NCBI RefSeq assembly: GCF_006345805.1
Contig: NC_043004.1
Location: 91,636,001 to 91,700,000, forward strand
DNA: 64,000 bases
Source: Octopus sinensis
Taxonomy: Eukaryota
Direction: 5' to 3'
In this document: one piece after another, positions 11,955 through 59,188 of the stretch
Position numbering within the stretch: position 1 is the first letter of the stretch
Layout: each line of letters begins with the position of its first letter
Program-made: the position numbers and the translations under genes
Notes under the pieces: generated by a model
Databases searched by the model: none
What the model saw: the letters and a program-made list of their open reading frames with translations, nothing else
What the model was told of the DNA's origin: nothing

Positions 11955-13048
11955 ATTCGGAGAGTGTTGAATGTGGAACGCAAAGATCCGGAGCAAATAT
12001 AGACGCTCTACCGATACTGCTAATCCACCCTTATAAATGACAATAATATTAAGCTTGCCGGGAAAAAATACTTAGCGGTATTTCGTCTGTCTTCATGTTC
12101 TGAGCTCAAATTCCCCCGAGGTCGACTTTGCCTTTCATCTTTTCGAGGTGGATAAAATAAGTACCACTTGAGTATTGGGGTCAATGTAATCGACTTACCC
12201 TTCTTCTAAAATTGCTGGCCGTCTGTCAAAATTTGACCTCGATGGGATTTGAACTAAGAATGTAAAGAGCTGGAACAAATACCGCAAAGCATTTTGTCCA
12301 ATGATCTAATGACTCTGCCAACGCACCGCACTACATCGTCCTAATAATGGTTTCAACTTTTGGCATCAGGCCAGCAATTTGCGGGGAGTCCGCAAATCGA
12401 ATACATCGATCCTAATGCTCAACTGGTACTTATTTTACCAACTCCGAAAGGTTGAGAGGTAAAATTGACCTCAGAGGAATTTGAACTCAGAGCGTAGACC
12501 TCAGAGGAATTTGAACTCAGAGCGTAGAGACGGGCGAGTTGCCGTTAAGCATTCTGCCCTGCGTGCTAACGATTCTGCCAGCTCATCGCCTTACATCACC
12601 CTAATAATCCTTTCCTACTATAGGCAGAAGGCCTGAAATTTTGAGGAAAGGAGTTAGTCGATTACATCGACCCCAGTGTTCTATTGGTGCTTAATTTATC
12701 GACCCTGAAAAGATGAAAAGCAAAGTCGACCTCGGCGGAATTTGAACTCGGAACATCAAGGCGAACAAATGCCGCTAACATCGCCCTAATAATATATTTC
12801 TTTACTACCCACAAGGGGCTAAACATAGAGGGGACAAACAAGGACGGACAAACGGGTCAATAAATTAAGTACCAGTTACGCATTGGGATTATATCGACCC
12901 CAGTGCGTAACTGGTACTTAATTTATTGACCCCGAAAGGATGAAAGGCCAAGTCGACCTCGGCTGAATTTGAACCCAGAACGTAACGGCAGACGAAATAC
13001 AGCTACGCATTTCGCCCGGCGTGCTAACGTTTCTGCCAGTTCGCCGCC
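11955..13048. mobile_element. Stack of about 5-6 SINE family B copies in both orientations
   Basis: Repeated head, B-box and gtcgat motifs. The copy at 12793-13048 (minus) is nearly full length. Confidence 0.8.
12467..12526. repeat. Perfect 30-bp tandem duplication inside a SINE
   Basis: gacctcagaggaatttgaactcagagcgta, twice. Confidence 0.9.
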
Positions 13049-13289
13049 TTCATCGCCCTAATAATAACATTAAAACAAGCCAGTGAACGGGTATATGCGA
13101 ATGTATGGGTAACTCTAAAAGTGTGCGTGTGCATATCTGTTTTCTTGCCTGCATGCATCTGTGCATGGAATTGCGTGTGTAAATAGGCACGTGAATGCAA
13201 GATTGCATATTGTGTGTATTTGTGAATCTGTATGTCAGTATGAATGGCTGTATGTGTGCAAAATATACGACAGATGTGCACTGAATGTG

Positions 13290-38874: not shown

Positions 38875-38924
38875 CCGGACGTAAAAATTCAGTAACAGCT
38901 CGCTCATGCTCTGGGAAAATATAT

Positions 38925-39222
38925 ATGTTTCTTTACTGCCCAGAAAGGGCTAAACACAGAGGGGACAAACAAGGACAGACGAAGGGATTGAGTCGATTAT
39001 ATCGCCCCCCGATGCGTAACTGGTACTTTATTTATCGACCCCGAAAGGATGAAAGGCAAAGTCGACCTCGGCGGAATTTGAACTCAGAACGTAACGACAG
39101 ACGAAATACCTATTTCTTTACTACCCACAAGGGGCTAAACACAGAGGAGACAAACAAGGACACGCACGAAATACCGCTAAGCATTTCGCCCGGCGCGCTA
39201 ACGTGTCTGCCAGCTCGCCGCT
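38925..39222 (-). mobile_element. SINE family B with an internal duplicated tail segment
   Basis: tatttctttactacccacaaggggctaaacacagag recurs at about 39110-39160 inside the element. Confidence 0.8.
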
Positions 39223-40661
39223 TTGGGAAAATATATGTATCGATCTATTAACATTTATATGTGTGTGTGTGTGTTTGTGTGTATGTGTTTGTGCGCGCGT
39301 GTGTGGTTGTGTGTGTATTAAGATCGAACAGTGAAAATGAGTGCTCAACTCCTCATTGCTGGATAAATATACTTTATTCGTAGTGTTCGTCTCCATCTTG
39401 GCTAAAAACAAGATGGAGACGATCACCAACGTCCTGTGTGGCAGACTTGACTATTTGTTAAGAGATATCTCGCTCAACATGAAACCAATGATAGTCTGGT
39501 TATTTCACCATTAAAGTATGTGTGTATATATGTGTGTGTGTGTATGTGTGCGTGTGTGTGTGTATGTGTGTGCGTATTATATCTATATATATACATACAC
39601 ATATATATAAATATATATGTATATATACATATATATATGCATGTATATATGAATGCATGTATGTTTGTATGTATGTATACATACATCTGCAGGTGCGTTT
39701 GCATATACGCGCGTGCGTACATATGTAAATGTGTATTTGTATCTATTTGCCAGTCTCTCTCTCTCTCTCTCTCTGTCTTTCTCACTCTCTCTCTCTCTGT
39801 ATATGTGCATGCGTGTGTGTGTGTGATGTGATGTGTGTGTGTGATGTGTGTGATGTGTGTGTGTGTGTGTGTGTGTGTGAACCCAGCAAATTACTTTCTG
39901 TCGTATCAGAAAATTTTGCATTAATACTAAGTAAAACTTTCATGAATGAAGAACATAGTCAAATCGCTCTTCACATGTGTGGTCGGTCAATCAATACATT
40001 AATGTTTTCAGTACTACTGACTATTATAACCAGCAAAGTCTGAAATAGATACTACTATTTAACTATGTGTGTGAATGAATATCTCGCCATATCTAATCAA
40101 TATTCGAATCTTTTGTGGTACTAACTATTATTATAACCAGCAATGTCTGAAAGATATGGTGCTGCTGTGTTATGTCTATGTGTGTGTAAAAGTATTTCTC
40201 CCTGTATGTGGTCGATATTTGAATATACTTTTTTTTTTACTACTAACTAACTATTGCTGCCGACTAGTGTCTGAAAGATGCTGTATTGGTAACCTAACTA
40301 GATTAATACGAATGAATTTTTCACTGGATGATTGATCGACCTGCAAGAATTAGAAGCCAACTCTGCTTCAAATCGCAACCTATTGACTTTGAAAAACGTT
40401 CATATTAAATTATTACAGCATGTTTGCAACTCGAGTTCTTTTCGAGTCTAGATCTGCTTAATTAAAGCCAAGCTTTTGTTAAACAACAAAGGTATCATAA
40501 TCATTAGCACCGGAAATAAATTGTGATTAATATGTAAATATGTGTGCAATGTTGGTGTAGTTTTGTTGCATTTTGTTTTTATATAATACATATTACACCC
40601 AGAATAATTTTTTTAAAAAAACGGCCACATCCATATGCTTAGTAGCCGAAGACTTTGATAA

Positions 40662-41051
40662 GGCATACATATACAAGTAGACACCAGCGAATTTGTTTCC
40701 TCATAACTTTCAGAAAAATTAGTACGTTTTAATGAATTTTTCGACAAATATCTTTCAGATGGTGTAAACTCTGATGATATCGAAATTTAATGTGAAAAGG
40801 AAAAAAGAAAAAAGAAAATGAAGGGTGCTCACATATACATACTGACAAACAGTACTTCTTTGCAGCTATTTATGTAATGTGTCAGTATATATGAATGTGC
40901 GTCCACCAACTTTTTTCACATTAAATGTCGATATAATCGTAATCTGCACCATCTGAAAGGTCGTCGCAGAACATTCTCATTGAAAAATACCGATTTTCCT
41001 GAAAGTTATGAGGAAGCAAAATAGGGACGGATGCACTTGTATATATATGCC
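40662..41051. mobile_element. MULE-type foldback MITE
   Basis: Long imperfect inverted arms (ggcatacatatacaag / cttgtatatatatgcc; ttcctcataactttcag / ctgaaagttatgaggaa; tttcagatggtg / caccatctgaaa). Flanks ctttgataa / gtttgataa form a 9-bp TSD (8/9). Confidence 0.8.
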
Positions 41052-41617
41052 GTTTGATAAAAAGGTAACGTGAAAAAAATAAAAACCATAATAAAACGGG
41101 GAAAATAGTCTTGATTACAAGATATTCAAAGATAGTGATATGAGGTGTGTGTTTGTATGGAGCGGAGGTAACTTCTCCAATTACAGGCCGCCATAGCTTG
41201 ATGAGGTCTATGCTCAACGAATGTAGGCTGTTTGCTGAAGAATAGTAAACGGTGAGAGATTTCTGGATAGCTGTAGTTTGGAGAAGAAAAGTACTGGATG
41301 AAGTATTTAGAAAAGGTAACACACTGTAGAAATGGTGGAAAGACGAAGTGAGAAGACGACAAGTAACTATATATATATATATATTATATTATATTATACA
41401 CAGACACACACACACGCAGCTAAGTGAAATAACGAACCTTTTAGATACTCGACACGTGACAGAAAATGTCAGCTATGTCATAATTCTAGGGAAAACATTA
41501 TAGATATTATCAGTAGTATGAGCCACATTTCATCAGCATCCCAGTACAGAACGCCATCCTTAGGATGCACTATTCTGAGTTAAATATGAGAATAGTCCGA
41601 CCACCTGGATACACTTA

Positions 41618-41825
41618 CCGTATTTTCGGGCGTGCAATTTGACATAATATATATAGTGTAATCATGCAATGTAAACATTCAAACGTAGTCACTATCTTTC
41701 CAAACCCTACTGCATTTCACGAGGAACTTTTGGCCTCTAAAGTCTTCTTGGTGTATAAGTCGACCTATTTTTTCTGGGTGTAAATTTTTATCTGAATAAT
41801 TCGATTTGTATGCCGGAAAATACCG
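41618..41825. mobile_element. Tc2/pogo-type MITE with TA TSD
   Basis: TA-CCGTATTTTCGGGCGTGCAA ... TTGTATGCCGGAAAATACCG-TA. Confidence 0.8.
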
Positions 41826-41828
41826 TAC

Positions 41829-41898
41829 CCATCCACAGCAACAGAAGCAATAATAATCACACCGAAATATCCACCAAATACAAACACAAGTGTATAAT
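41829..41898 (-). CDS. Candidate 70-nt exon, possibly encoding a transmembrane helix
   Basis: Strong acceptor ttttctctttctacggttcag. Frame YTLVFVFGGYFGVIIIASVAVD; a second, Cys-rich frame is also open. The donor reconstructs to GG|GTAAGT when the MITE is removed. Confidence 0.55.
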
Positions 41899-42926
41899 CT
41901 GAACCGTAGAAAGAGAAAACAAGCACAGGTCGTTATATTGCATCTCATATGCGTATCTGAGTATGCAGTATGGTTCTCAGTTCCACGGAGACATGATAGA
42001 ATAGGCACAGCAGAATTATGGGATAGGACGAGACATCGGGTTGAGACGTCAGTTGGAGGCGTCAAATCGAGACGTCAGATCAACTACACACTAAAAACTA
42101 GATTAATGCATCCAACAATACCACCTGGGACGGCAAACAAAAATGAATATGAATGATTCTGCTAGATCAACAATTTAATGTATCTGAAGAACCTACCGAA
42201 AGTCAGGGAAGAACTTGGGTTAGATTTACAGTTATTTTGGAGTTTGAATTTTCTATAAATATATTTTATATATTAAAATTTCATCTTGTAATCATTGTTA
42301 CATTTGGTTGATGTCGCCAAAGTTTACGTAAATAGTGTTTAAATTTAGAAGTTTTCCTCGAAAAAAAACCCCAAAAAACGAACCATCTTCTAAGACGTGT
42401 TCTCCAAATTTAATCTATAAGCACCATAGTAATATCGTACAAGATTCATTTATATATTTAGCATCTAGCGATACACATATGTTGATGTGTAAATACCAAC
42501 AATAGATGCTACTTCTCAGCTAGGAATCTACTCCTTCTTTATGTGAGGAATATAAAGAATATACAATCACTCCCCCCACACACACACATATACACATATA
42601 AACATATGTGTGTGTGTCTGTGTGTGTGTGTGCGTGTGTATTTTCATGTGTGTTCCTAAGAGCATCACGAAGCAGAGTATGTTAACATATTTCATTTGGT
42701 GACTAGATTACAGAGTTAATTATACTCACTAACTGGGAACACGTTCAGTTAGAACCGAAACAGAAATAAATACATTCCTTAAACTAGTCACTAGGTAATA
42801 TATATATATACATACATATATAGATTAGTTACAAGATTCATTAGAATCTAGGCACATCAACATGTAGAACGCCAAGGCTGGCTAGGTACCATAACAACTA
42901 GATACAACATACATACATATAATATG

Positions 42927-42997
<71 letters not shown>

Positions 42998-43770
42998 GCC
43001 TACATACATATACATACATACATACATACATACAAACGTACATACATACATACATACATATATACATACACACACACATATATATATATATATACAAGAT
43101 AAGAAAATGGAGAAATACATCTGAATCAAATATCAATTACCAGATAATACTCAATCACATACTTTATTAAACCACCACATAAGAGACTGTAGGGTTAAAT
43201 ATAAAAAGCAGAACAAATCAGTGTACATAAAGGAATGTACATAAAAACAAAAGTGTACATATATATATATATACTGTTTAGTACCCATATACAAACGGTT
43301 CTCTAAACGAACAAATCAATAACGAATAGTTTGTCCGAAAGAAAATTAAACTTGCGAAAGTGGCTGAAATTTGATCAACAAACCCACGAATAGACTACGC
43401 GACTGTATACGTCACTGGGAGCTCTTTCGCTTTGCGAGCTGAATTTTAAACAACAAATCTCAGTAAGACTATACACTCGTAAAGAAGATTAAATTCGGTC
43501 AACGAGCTGATATTTGAACAACAAACCAGATGTAGACTACGGACGCATATAAGTGGTGGGGAGTGGATGCACAAAGTGTTCTTTAACACCCATGTTAAAG
43601 TTGTCAATTATCATATTTTATACAGAAAATAATATCTCTCATAGTTTTTGGCTAAGAACATAACTATAGATCGCCAGAAGCAAGACATATACACACATAC
43701 AAAGTTACCCACATGCATTTTCACTTTTCTTATCTCCTTTCCTTCCTTCCCATTCCTGGAATTTCTTCTT

Positions 43771-43805
43771 GTATCCGACGAAGGACTATATCCGAAATGT
43801 TATAC
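43771..43805 (+). ncRNA. Minimal hammerhead motif, CCGACGA variant, degenerate
   Basis: Reads GTAT-CCGACGA-A-GGA-CTATA-TCC-GAAA-TG-TT^ATAC. Confidence 0.5.
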
Positions 43806-48475: not shown

Positions 48476-48516
48476 TGTATGTATGTATGTATGTATGTAT
48501 GTTGTATTACGTATCT

Positions 48517-48740
48517 AGGATCTTTACCTTTTGACCGGCAATCGAAAAATTAATTTTTTGTAACTAAACACTTTCAAACTTCGTATACTGGTAGAATGTG
48601 TCACATAAAACATCTTTTACTGTAGGCGTCGTTGAGAAAATTCTGTATTTTCGAAGTTATTTCGTGTTAAAATTGTGGTATTCCGGTAATTTCAACCAAT
48701 CAATGACGTCTATTGAGGTGAATACAAAGGTAAAGATCCT
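48517..48740. mobile_element. MITE with 15-bp TIRs
   Basis: AGGATCTTTACCTTT (48517-48531) / AAAGGTAAAGATCCT (48726-48740). Superfamily unclear. Confidence 0.7.
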
Positions 48741-50123
48741 GTATATATATATATGTATACACACATATACATATACATGCATACACACACATACATACAT
48801 GTATAGATGTATATGTATGTCTATCTATCTCTATCCTGTAGCTTTCTCTTTGTCTCTGATTTTTTTTCTAATCCTTCAATCCCGTTGTCTCCTACCCATC
48901 TCTCCTCCTTCTACATGACCGGTGTCGGCCATGATCTTTCTTTCTTGGGCTGACTACCAACCGTCAACACTTTTTATGTCCATCTCCCATATTCCTACCT
49001 TTATGGTTTCACTTCATACACGCCAGCTCAATTTGATTCATTCTCAGTCGAAAAACGCCTGTTGTTATTTCTTGTTTGTATTCGTAATTGTGTACAATGT
49101 TCTCCGCTTTTTGTTTATTTGTTTTGTTTTTTGTTTTTTTCTTTTTGTTACCGTACACATTCGCTAGCTTTCTTACAAAGGGTTCTAATGCTCATATCTT
49201 AGATTTGGGAGGCAACCAGATCGAACCATCTCAAGTGTAACTGCCCGAAACGGTCGTGACTTCTGGAACTTGACTGATGAAAGGAAGCCAAGAATGACCC
49301 GTCTTTTTTTTTGCCTGTGCTTCTAATTGTTGTTTCTTTTGTCCGCCTATATATCGTCTATCTGTCCGAACATTTTAATGTCCTCTATTGCGTTTTTGTT
49401 CCATATATATATATGTATATATAGTTCATTAATTTAGTAGTCAGAAACTCCTACTGCTAAAAAATTTAAAACACTGAGCAATATCAGTCAATCGAGATTT
49501 CTGGAAAACACGGACGAAGTCGATAGGCGGCTGATGATGAAAACAGTGCACAATTTGGTTGATCTCACTGAAGTCGGCTTTTTTCTTTGTTGCTCTGAGA
49601 ATTCAAATACAAGTAGGTTTGTATTTACACACACACACATGTCCGTTGTCAGGTTTTATCTCTCTGTACGTGTACATACGGGCTTGTAAGTTTATTCTGG
49701 TTTAAAACAATATATAAGTCTCTCTGGTCAGTGTTTTCCACCCTCAAACTGTATTATATTATACATTGTTGTGCATGTAACCAACTTAATGCATTTAAAT
49801 GTTCTGCAATAAACACACATTTTATTCAAATGGCTCCGAGGAACCCATATCGTGTCACACAAACACTCAACTCTAAGCACAATGTTTCTTTCAGCAGAAA
49901 CAGCTGTAAGCTGATGAAAGCGATTATGTAACTCCTGTCATTTATGATAGGCAATGATATACTGTAAGGAGAAGAGACCAAAAGCTGAGGACCAAGATTC
50001 TGATAAATTTGAAAAGCTTCAGTTTTGAAAGTGTTTTAAGAGGATATCTTCATTACTATTATTATTATTACTATTATTATTATTATTTTTATTATTATTA
50101 TCATTTTTATTATTATTATTATT

Positions 50124-55441: not shown

Positions 55442-55541
55442 NNNNNNNNNNNNNNNNNNNNNNNNNNNNNNNNNNNNNNNNNNNNNNNNNNNNNNNNNNN
55501 NNNNNNNNNNNNNNNNNNNNNNNNNNNNNNNNNNNNNNNNN
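55442..55541. other. Assembly gap (100 N)
   Basis: Run of exactly 100 N; probably a fixed-size scaffolding gap. Confidence 0.99.
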
Positions 55542-56669: not shown

Positions 56670-56877
56670 AATACTGACTTCAAATTTTGGCACGAGGCCA
56701 GTAATTTCGAGAGAGTGGGTAAGTCGATTAGATTGACCCTAGTACTCAGCTGGTATTTATTTTTTCGACCCCGAAAGAATGAAAGGCAAAGTCGACTTCG
56801 GCGATATTTGAACTCAGAACGTAAAGACGGACGAAATTCCGCTGAGCATTTGCTAACGTTTCTGCCAGCTCGCCGCT
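56670..56877 (-). mobile_element. SINE family B
   Basis: Full head-to-tail match. Confidence 0.8.
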
Positions 56878-57512
56878 TTGCATCACTGAACATATTCAAG
56901 ATAAATTTTCATTACGCGTGCCATTCACATAATCCCGCGGGCCGCAGTTTGCCTGTGACTGCACTATACCATAATATATTTCACCTCAATACACATCACA
57001 TCACATCACAACATACCACGTCAGTTTTGCCTTTTGCACTAGGTTGTTTTCAGGCCGCACTTGGAAAGGTGGGGGGTACCTCCTCTTCTCGTCAAAAATT
57101 TTCTGTGGTCCTTATTTGGACTTCTGGAATCTGGACCGATGTGCCAGTTGAACCAACCCAATCTCATTGGCCCGGCACACTGCTTTGTAACATTCTACAT
57201 CATACTGTACAATTCTATATCTTGCCCTCTTACATCATGTTACGTCATACCTACGTACCATCGTCATGCCGCTCGCTCAGTCCTGATATATCTACAGCGA
57301 CTTTACTCTACAACATTGGCCTAAACACACACACATACAAACTCACACACACAAACTCACACACACACACACACACACGCACACACACACACATACACAC
57401 ACACACACACTCTCTCTCTCTCTATCTCTCTCTCTCTCCCTTATCCAAACATATATACAACTAAAGGTGTGATAGATAGATACATATACATACATACAAT
57501 ATTATTTATATA

Positions 57513-58295: not shown

Positions 58296-58785
58296 GAATT
58301 CTGGTGGAATATTCCCATCAAAACTTCTGTCAAATGTAAACATAACAGGCCGGATATTGTCGTTTGAGACAGAGGGGCAAAGGTAAGTGCCATCGTAGAG
58401 GTCAGCTGCCCTGCATATATGACTATCTCCTTGAAAATCAAAGAAGAAGATTTCTATGGACAGCTGCTTCGAAACGTCCAGCTTCTATATCCAGACTATG
58501 AATTTATATTCATACCAATAATAATTGGAGCACTAGGTGTTGTTAGTAAATGCTTAAAGAATGCTTAAAGAATAATCTGGATAAACTGAGATTTTCAGAA
58601 AGAGAAATCGACCGACTAATTCGTATATTACAAATGCAATTTCTGAGTGGAACAGTAAAAATATGCAATTTCCAAATGTGAATTTGTCTGTGTTAACTAT
58701 ATCCCAAAGATGGACCCTCGTATCATTGTTGGAAACCGGCTCCCTCCTCAGTGGAAGATTCATAATAATTAAAAAATAGAAGAGA
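58296..58785 (+). mobile_element. 5'-truncated RLE (R2-superfamily) non-LTR retrotransposon remnant in (TACA)n
   Basis: EFWWNIPIKTSVKCKHNRPDIVV*DRGAKVSAIVEVSCP...FYGQLLRNVQLLYPDYEFIFIPIIIGALG...LSGTVKICNFQM*, a PD-(D/E)xK nuclease motif. One premature stop and an 11-bp duplication frameshift. Confidence 0.85.
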
Positions 58786-58834
58786 CATACATACATACAT
58801 ACGTACATTTCGGCTAACTCTGATGAGCGTAAAG

Positions 58835-59188
58835 TTATATAATCGGATTGTTACCTTCTAGATAATAATCAAACATAATATTTTTAGCTTCCAAATTCAA
58901 TTTTCTAAGTGTATCAAACGGTACAACCCTATATTTTTTTGTAATTTCTCTAAGTAATAACTCACGGTAAGTTTGAGTGTCACTGTTGTATATATTACTA
59001 GATTTATCCGTATGAGTTAAGATACCATCTTTACTCTTAAGAGTTCTGATAATTTCCTTCAATTTCCTTTGGTATGGATTCCTTAGTGGATGATTCTTGA
59101 ACTTAATACTCCTAATGGTATTCCATAAATCCTGCTCGAAGTTATCCAAGTATTTATTTGGTGGTGGTGATTTTCTTGATATAACAAG
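58835..59188 (-). pseudogene. Penelope-like element ORF, N-terminal fragment
   Basis: KSPPPNKYLDNFEQDLWNTIRSIKF...YQRKLKEII...ILTHTDKSSNIY...YRELLLREITKKY resembles the pre-RT region of PLE proteins (FE.DL, ADK..N.Y, Y..LL...IT..Y). Assigned from recall. Confidence 0.7.

What the first reader, a model, noticed from the sequence alone, without database searches (positions are those of the whole stretch)
41610..41898. MITE inserted into the TA of a GTAAGT splice donor
On the minus strand the exon ends GATGG|GTA and is followed by the MITE, whose far side reads ...ACGG-TA-AGTGT. Removing the MITE and one TA restores GG|GTAAGT, a perfect donor. The insertion leaves a weaker proximal donor (GTACGG), recreates a perfect one (G|GTAAGT) about 210 nt downstream, and adds a cryptic G|GTATTT 5 nt in. 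It may therefore cause alternative splicing, frame change or MITE exonisation. It also independently supports the exon.
Basis: partly seen in the sequence, partly recalled or inferred. Interest (0 to 1): 0.75.

Follow-up and report, generated by a model that had tools for sequence, protein, structure and literature searches.

The report
Probable MITE beside an unproven splice donor
A small TA-flanked inverted-repeat element, probably an old MITE, really does sit inside a GGTAAGT motif, but nothing I could test shows that the motif is a working splice donor or that the 70-nt stretch before it is an exon, so this is most likely an ordinary transposon relic in non-coding DNA.

Summary
On the minus strand, ...GATGG|GTA is followed by a 208-nt element flanked by TA (41827-41826 and 41617-41616), with imperfect terminal inverted repeats (19/25 matches, 21/27 counting the TA). 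Its far side reads ACGG-TA-AGTGT. Deleting the element and one TA gives GATGG|GTAAGT. The second GGTAAGT lies exactly 210 nt downstream, and G|GTATTT lies 5 nt in.

The interpretation has little support.
- **MITE:** The element is the only copy in the window. No relatives turned up in the two public DNA collections scanned, or in a literature search for the terminal sequence. It does not fold better than shuffled sequence. About 0.2 such TA-flanked repeats per window are expected by chance.
- **Exon:** The 70 nt are T/G-rich, so an open frame is expected anyway. Acceptor, open frame and donor together occur about 0.3 times per shuffled window, against 2 observed. The peptide and every neighbouring ORF have no relative among 5.8 billion proteins, and there is no Pfam match. 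The one hit in the 1.84-billion library is spurious. No partner exons are visible.

My best reading is a degenerate Tc1/mariner-type MITE in unique non-coding DNA of a repeat-rich animal genome, with splice-like context arising by chance. Interest is low.

The parts
41616..41827 (-). Whole MITE-like element including both flanking TA dinucleotides (212 nt; body 41618-41825 is 208 nt)
   Evidence: (I1); single copy in the window
41826..41827 (.). Upstream TA (putative target-site duplication copy 1; also positions +2/+3 of the proximal GT)
   Evidence: direct reading
41616..41617 (.). Downstream TA (putative target-site duplication copy 2; also positions +2/+3 of the distal GTAAGT)
   Evidence: direct reading
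41801..41825 (-). 5' terminal inverted repeat on the minus strand, CGGTATTTTCCGGCATACAAATCGA
   Evidence: 19/25 matches to the other arm
41618..41642 (-). 3' terminal inverted repeat (plus strand reads CCGTATTTTCGGGCGTGCAATTTGA)
41829..41898 (-).
   Evidence: no credible homologue
41899..41925 (-). Acceptor-like pyrimidine tract ending in CAG (cttgttttctctttctacggttcag)
41823..41831 (-). Proximal donor-like site TGG|GTACGG (crude PWM 2.0 bits, top 2.8% of GT sites on this strand)
41613..41621 (-). Distal donor-like site ACG|GTAAGT (crude PWM 6.4 bits, top 0.12% of GT sites), 210 nt downstream of the proximal one
41818..41826 (-). Cryptic donor-like site ACG|GTATTT, 5 nt into the element (crude PWM -0.7 bits, so no better than an average GT)
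41765..41767 (-). First in-frame stop (TAG) if the YTLVF... frame read into the element

Best explanation
A degenerate, non-autonomous cut-and-paste transposon relic sits in about 3.4 kb of sequence not repeated elsewhere in the window, and apparently non-coding, in a repeat-rich animal genome. It is a MITE of the TA-targeting Tc1/mariner/pogo type, with a 208-nt body and a TA duplication. It inserted at a TA that happened to lie in the heptamer GGTAAGT. The upstream 'exon' is a T/G-rich stretch whose open frame and acceptor-like tract arise from composition. On this reading the element has no effect on splicing because nothing is spliced here. Shown: the anatomy (TA flanks, terminal repeats ending exactly at the TAs, size, no coding capacity) and the lack of any homology support for the exon. 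Inferred: that the element arrived by transposition, and that the region is not an exon.
For: Element anatomy. TA-flanked 19/25 repeats are expected only about 0.2 times per window. The termini CGGT/CCGT differ by one base from the CAGT termini typical of Tc1/pogo elements; this rests on my own knowledge and is not tested. A Tc1-like transposase relic at 31467-32279 shows that the superfamily has been active in this genome. Against an exon: the 55-aa ORF shares no three 5-residue words with any of 5.8 billion proteins. An 819-aa concatenation of all ORFs between 40.9 and 42.5 kb gave nothing at E<=1. Pfam gave nothing. The full HMMER scan of 1.84 billion representatives gave one hit, a 2514-aa protein built of a short repeated unit. 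It was matched in five stretches, and the best spans the junction between the proposed exon and the element, so it is spurious. With 49% T and 16% A, at least one open frame is expected in roughly 0.6 of such 70-nt stretches (arithmetic from the composition). Donor plus acceptor plus open frame at this candidate's own thresholds: 2 observed against 0.33 expected per window. No in-phase partner exons were seen. There are no long non-repetitive ORFs anywhere in the window.
Against: The MITE call rests on one copy. No relatives were found in the window, in IMG/VR or in JGI metagenomes, and no empty site was available. The terminal repeats match at only 76%, and the strand folds no better than shuffles (z=+0.77). 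Only 12 of 7136 TA sites (0.17%) lie in GGTAAGT. An acceptor-like site with an open frame 70 nt upstream is also uncommon, seen at 2 of 46 strong donors. The coincidence is therefore not trivial. The protein databases may not contain this species, because the best hits to its Tc1-like relic are only 66-68% identical. That weakens the negative homology result.
Confidence: 0.6

Rival explanations
1. 41829-41898 is a genuine internal exon, perhaps coding for a transmembrane segment, and its GG|GTAAGT donor was split by a MITE inserted at the TA. The gene now uses the weakened GTACGG donor, which leaves the exon end unchanged. Some use of the distal GGTAAGT would add 210 nt with an in-frame TAG at 41767-41765. 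Use of the site 5 nt in would shift the frame.
For: All the geometry holds. The restored site scores 4.7 bits and the distal site 6.4 bits on a crude donor matrix, placing the distal site in the top 0.12% of GT sites. A good pyrimidine tract ending in CAG lies 70 nt upstream, with two open frames. The locus lies in 3.4 kb with no other copy in the window. Only 0.17% of TA sites are in GGTAAGT. [quoted passage not shown]
Against: The homology searches found nothing for the peptide or any neighbouring ORF; the single hit in the 1.84-billion library is spurious. No partner exons are visible. The T/G-rich composition explains the open frame. Combined exon-like signals are expected about 0.3-0.9 times per shuffled window. 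An insertion at +3/+4 of a used donor would normally be selected against, yet the 24% divergence between the terminal repeats suggests an old insertion. There are no transcript data.
Confidence: 0.1
2. There is no transposon. The inverted repeat is a chance feature of AT-rich sequence and the flanking TA dinucleotides are coincidental, so nothing was ever inserted and there was no ancestral GGTAAGT at 41828.
For: There is a single copy and no family was found anywhere searched. Only about 15 terminal nucleotides pair, and the fold is no better than shuffles. The best-matching core (12/14 inside the TAs) would occur about twice per window by chance (my binomial estimate). TA is the commonest kind of dinucleotide flank here, with 7136 sites.
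Against: Over 25 nt the expectation is only 0.2 per window. Complementarity is strongest at the very ends and stops exactly at the TAs. The size and lack of coding capacity fit a MITE. The genome carries Tc1-like relics.
Confidence: 0.3

Closest known systems
Tc1/mariner-derived (Stowaway-like) MITEs
   Same: TA flanks consistent with a 2-bp target-site duplication, short terminal inverted repeats, about 200 nt, AT-rich interior, no coding capacity. Termini CNGT resemble the CAGT of Tc1/pogo elements (from my own knowledge).
   Different: No family was demonstrated, since this is a single copy in 64 kb. The terminal repeats match at only 76%. The ends are unlike those of the only Tc1-like relic in the window and its relatives L010-L012. 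No empty site is available.
MITE- or TE-associated alternative 5' splice sites and exonisation (mulberry MITEs, PMC6593561; Alu exonisation, cited there)
   Different: In those cases the exons and junctions are backed by transcript data. Here neither the exon nor any junction has evidence.
Introner elements (TE-derived introns; PNAS 2022, PMC9860276, seen as title and abstract)
   Same: A small mobile element whose insertion interacts with splice-site sequence. That introners co-opt the target-site duplication as part of a splice site is from my own knowledge.
   Different: Introners insert into exons and are spliced out whole. This element has no pyrimidine tract before its 3' ...GGTAAG. Splicing it out whole would run into a stop after 11 codons, and the restored sequence reads GAT GGG TAA, a stop directly after the proposed exon end (direct reading). 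It is also a single copy, not a burst family.
[D1,2] stwintrons (an intron nested in the donor of another intron; PMC12403724, abstract seen)
   Same: The formal similarity is a donor hexamer interrupted by inserted sequence.
   Different: In a stwintron the inner sequence is itself a U2 intron whose removal rebuilds the outer donor. Here removing any GT...AG unit does not rebuild GTAAGT. Only DNA excision of the element and one TA does.

Membership tests
MITE of the Tc1/mariner superfamily | 2-bp TA target-site duplication flanking the element | tested here: met
   TA at 41827-41826 and 41617-41616. This is weak on its own because TA is frequent (7136 sites). The shared flank can also be read as GTA or GGTA.
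MITE of the Tc1/mariner superfamily | Terminal inverted repeats that end at the duplication | tested here: met
   19/25 matches inside the TAs, with no complementarity outside them. Chance expectation is 0.2 per window.
MITE of the Tc1/mariner superfamily | Small size and no coding capacity | tested here: met
   208-nt body. The ORFs across it have no Pfam or database match.
MITE of the Tc1/mariner superfamily | Multiple related copies in the genome (a family) | tested here: inconclusive
   No second copy in the 64-kb window. IMG/VR and JGI metagenome scans gave only chance or unrelated palindromic matches. The source genome itself could not be searched.
MITE of the Tc1/mariner superfamily | Termini shared with an autonomous transposase-encoding element | tested here: not met
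   The only candidates available have quite different ends: the Tc1-like relic at 31467-32279 and its intact relatives L010-L012. Other autonomous families could not be examined.
MITE of the Tc1/mariner superfamily | Empty site in an allele, paralogue or related species | not testable with these tools
   No eukaryotic genome collection was searchable by DNA. Protein-based retrieval of orthologous contigs found nothing.
Functional U2-type 5' splice site of a protein-coding exon | Match to the donor consensus MAG|GTRAGT | tested here: met
   Distal ACG|GTAAGT 6.4 bits, restored TGG|GTAAGT 4.7 bits, proximal TGG|GTACGG only 2.0 bits on a crude matrix. The window has 12 GGTAAGT sites over both strands.
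Functional U2-type 5' splice site of a protein-coding exon | Upstream acceptor and an open reading frame of exon size | tested here: inconclusive
   Both are present, but the combination is expected 0.3-0.9 times per shuffled window. The open frame follows from 49% T and 16% A.
Functional U2-type 5' splice site of a protein-coding exon | Encoded peptide has relatives, or belongs to an annotated protein | tested here: not met
   Searches gave nothing. The only hit is spurious. The source species may be absent from the databases.
Functional U2-type 5' splice site of a protein-coding exon | Neighbouring exons of the same gene on the same strand | tested here: inconclusive
   A crude splice-site scan found no convincing co-linear exons, and there are no long non-repetitive ORFs. 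Short exons would escape this.
Functional U2-type 5' splice site of a protein-coding exon | Transcription and observed splice junctions | not testable with these tools
   No transcript data were available.
Introner-like element | The element with its duplication forms a complete intron (donor, pyrimidine tract and AG) inside a coding exon, and belongs to a many-copy family | tested here: not met
   There is no pyrimidine tract before ...CGGTAAG. The frame hits a stop 11 codons after that AG. It is a single copy.

The most novel reading that the evidence does not exclude
A real, long-tolerated MITE insertion between +3 and +4 of the canonical donor of a lineage-specific transmembrane-protein exon. 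On this reading the TA duplication and the element's terminal ...CGG keep a usable GTA... donor at the original exon end and rebuild a perfect GGTAAGT 210 nt downstream. The gene would then survive the hit and gain alternative 5' splice sites, one of them giving a transcript with a premature stop.
Probability: 0.08. Interest if true: 0.4.

Novelty: new member of a known kind. Interest (0 to 1): 0.12.

Why it matters
If the exon were real, this would be a tidy natural example of how a TA-targeting transposon can land inside a GTAAGT donor without destroying it, creating alternative donors. It would be useful as an illustration. The phenomenon itself is already documented: TE-driven alternative 5' splice sites and exonisation are known in plants and primates (PMC6593561). 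As things stand, the finding is an ordinary, unclassified MITE-like relic in non-coding DNA. Its main value is as a caution: GGTAAGT next to a T-rich open stretch is not evidence of an exon in an AT-rich, repeat-rich genome.

Tried and rejected
- **Other copies in the window:** blastn with word size 7 found none.
- **Terminal repeat in IMG/VR:** four hits matched only the pattern itself and are chance.
- **Paired terminal repeats in JGI metagenomes:** five hits, all unrelated long palindromes in GC-richer contigs.
- **Full-text literature search for the terminal sequence:** it found only PCR primers.
- **Link to the window's Tc1-like relic and its intact relatives from ENA and Logan contigs:** the ends are unrelated.
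- **Link to the two other TA-flanked inverted repeats (40704-41008, 48508-48749):** no similarity.
- **Hairpin stability:** no better than shuffles.
- **Rfam and tRNA scans of the whole window:** nothing.
- **Exon homology:** there was no credible hit in any search. The one hit (P0027) is a repeat protein matched across the junction between the proposed exon and the element, so I rejected it.
- **Recovering orthologous or empty-site contigs through spurious ORF calls around the locus:** nothing was on record.
- **Introner reading:** considered and rejected, as set out under membership.
- **3-bp (GTA) or 4-bp (GGTA) duplication:** considered and rejected, because those registers worsen the terminal-repeat alignment.

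Full report
**Context.** The window is eukaryotic. It is about 35% G+C and crowded with microsatellites and short interspersed repeats. It has a 100-N scaffold gap at 55442-55541. About 31% of it matches other parts of the window even with low-complexity filtering. No Rfam family and no tRNA gene is detected. The repeat landscape reminds me of coleoid cephalopod genomes. Octopus vulgaris is reported as 66% repeats, with 11.6% SINEs and Tc1-Mariner and MITE families (PMC13282606). That resemblance is from memory and I could not test it, so the organism remains unidentified. There are no long non-repetitive ORFs anywhere in the window.

**The observation.** Every sequence statement in the finding is correct.
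- On the minus strand a pyrimidine tract ends in ...ttctacggttcag.
- A 70-nt stretch follows at 41898-41829 and ends in GATGG.
- GTA follows at 41828-41826.
- The TA at 41827-41826 and the TA at 41617-41616 bracket a 208-nt body.
- The ends of that body are inverted repeats: CGGTATTTTCCGGCATACAAATCGA against CCGTATTTTCGGGCGTGCAATTTGA. That is 19/25 matches, or 21/27 with the TAs, and the repeat finder lists it as I1.
- Complementarity is best at the extreme ends and stops at the TAs.
- Deleting 41618-41827 gives GATGG|GTAAGTGT.
- The rebuilt G|GTAAGT (G at 41619) is exactly 210 nt from the proximal GT.
- G|GTATTT sits 5 nt in, at 41824|41823.

**Is the element a MITE?** Several features fit.
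- It has TA flanks and terminal repeats that end at those flanks.
- It is about 200 nt long with no coding capacity.
- Its termini (CGGT/CCGT) are one base away from the CAGT typical of Tc1/pogo elements. That comparison is from my own knowledge.
- The genome carries an internally deleted Tc1-like transposase relic at 31467-32279. Its relatives have DDE_3 and HTH_Tnp_Tc3_2 domains, and it is 80% identical in DNA to intact copies in Logan contigs.
- Non-simple TA-flanked inverted repeats with at least 19/25 matches are expected only about 0.2 times per window in block shuffles.

Other results count against it.
- It is the only copy in the window.
- Its ends are unlike those of the Tc1-like relic and its relatives.
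- The strand folds no better than shuffles, with z=+0.77.
- A terminal-repeat pattern scan of IMG/VR gave four chance hits.
- A paired-repeat scan of JGI metagenomes gave five unrelated palindromes.
- A literature string search gave only primers.

No eukaryotic genome was searchable by DNA, so neither copy number nor an empty site could be tested. I put the MITE reading at roughly 0.6-0.7 and a chance repeat at about 0.3.

**Is there an exon and a donor?** I scored sites with a crude donor matrix based on generic metazoan frequencies from my own knowledge.

| Site | Sequence | Score (bits) | Rank among minus-strand GT sites |
|---|---|---|---|
| Proximal | TGG\|GTACGG | 2.0 | top 2.8% |
| Distal | ACG\|GTAAGT | 6.4 | top 0.12% |
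| Restored | TGG\|GTAAGT | 4.7 | not ranked |
| Cryptic | ACG\|GTATTT | -0.7 | top 23% (unremarkable) |

- **Rarity of the combination.** In the restored window, 2 of 46 strong donors have an acceptor of this quality with an open frame upstream. Block shuffles give 0.33 such candidates per window at these thresholds, which I chose after seeing the candidate. They give 0.9 at a slightly looser threshold. The exon-like appearance is therefore at most weakly above chance.
- **Composition.** The 70 nt are 49% T, 27% G, 16% A and 9% C. At that composition, at least one open frame in 23 codons is expected about 60% of the time, and hydrophobic translations that look like membrane segments follow automatically.
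- **Homology searches.** None supports an exon.
  - The 55-aa ORF shares no three 5-residue words with any of 5.8 billion proteins.
  - An 819-aa concatenation of every ORF between 40.9 and 42.5 kb, which includes the other open frame, gave nothing at E<=1.
  - Pfam gave nothing.
  - The exhaustive HMMER scan of 1.84 billion representatives returned one protein, P0027, at E=2.5e-8. It is a 2514-aa protein built of a repeated ...ITSIGYGAFSGCSGLMS... unit and looks bacterial to me. It was matched in five stretches. The best stretch covers query residues 17-52, which cross from the proposed exon into the element, so it is a composition and repeat artefact.
- **Neighbouring exons.** A scan for co-linear exon candidates found nothing convincing.
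- **Caveat.** The best hits to this genome's own Tc1-like relic are only 66-68% identical. The species may therefore be missing from the protein collections, which weakens the negative result.

**Weighing the coincidence.** Only 12 of 7136 TA sites (0.17%) lie in GGTAAGT on either strand, so a random TA insertion rarely lands there. The competing hypothesis needs three things. The window must contain a real GTAAGT-type donor, one of very few insertions must have hit that single TA, and the hit must have been tolerated for long enough that the terminal repeats diverged by 24%. My rough estimate puts the two routes within an order of magnitude of each other. The negative homology and the absence of partner exons then tilt towards chance context.

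**Consequences if the exon were real.**
- The proximal GT keeps the original exon end, because the insertion lies at intron positions +3/+4. The coding sequence would be unchanged if GTACGG is used.
- Use of the distal GGTAAGT adds 210 nt. That is in frame by length, but it carries a TAG at 41767-41765, 22 codons in.
- Use of the site 5 nt in shifts the frame.
- The restored sequence reads GAT GGG TAA, which is compatible with either a donor or simply the end of a chance ORF.

**Comparison with known systems.**
- Introner elements show that small transposable elements can create introns on insertion (PMC9860276). This element fails the introner tests: there is no 3' pyrimidine tract, a stop follows the candidate AG, and it is a single copy.
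- [D1,2] stwintrons (PMC12403724) are a formal analogue of an interrupted donor but work by nested splicing, which does not apply here.

**Verdict.** This is an ordinary member of a known kind and of low interest unless transcript data show otherwise.

Noticed in passing
window 31467-32279 (+): Internally deleted relic of a Tc1-like transposon. The transposase remnant covers 31728-32183 in two frames, and about 426 nt is missing at 31721/31732 relative to intact copies. Best protein relatives are 349-aa transposases with DDE_3 and HTH_Tnp_Tc3_2 domains, 66-68% identical. DNA identity to Logan contigs from SRR24188320 and SRR24188319 is about 80%.
   Followed up: partly
window 40662-41051: Long imperfect palindrome of about 390 nt whose arms are 66.5% identical. 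It lies about 600 nt from the finding and contains a TA-flanked 19/25 inverted repeat at 40704-41008, although complementarity extends beyond those TAs. It may be a foldback or MITE-like element. It is unrelated in sequence to the element under study.
   Followed up: partly
window 48508-48749: Another TA-flanked inverted repeat (arms CGTATCTAGGATCTTTACCTTTTGA / TACAAAGGTAAAGATCCTGTATA), 242 nt, next to a microsatellite. It may be a second MITE-like element and shows no similarity to the first.
   Followed up: partly
window, many sites, e.g. 614-851, 1678-2250 (inverted pair), 12077-13050, 38890-39240, 56722-56880: At least 15 copies or fragments of a SINE-like repeat in both orientations (19 plus and 14 minus HSPs), 75-98% identical to the 38890-39240 copy. 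ARAGORN and Rfam find no tRNA in them.
   Followed up: partly
window 55442-55541: A run of exactly 100 N, which is a scaffold gap, so the window comes from a scaffolded assembly.
   Followed up: no
window 42030-42078: Three tandem 13-nt units (GAGACGTCAG-like) just upstream of the proposed exon on the minus strand. Their meaning is unknown (D1).
   Followed up: no
window 58368-59188: High-complexity ORF fragments on both strands: 117 aa on the minus strand (LVISRKSPPPNKYLDNFEQDLW...) and 66 aa on the plus strand. They look like decayed retroelement coding sequence. Pfam found nothing, and I did not check whether the low-coverage hits (P0022-P0026) fall on them.
   Followed up: partly
window 40400-43800: About 3.4 kb around the finding has no other copy in the window, unlike most of the rest. 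This is compatible with, but not evidence for, a functional region.
   Followed up: no
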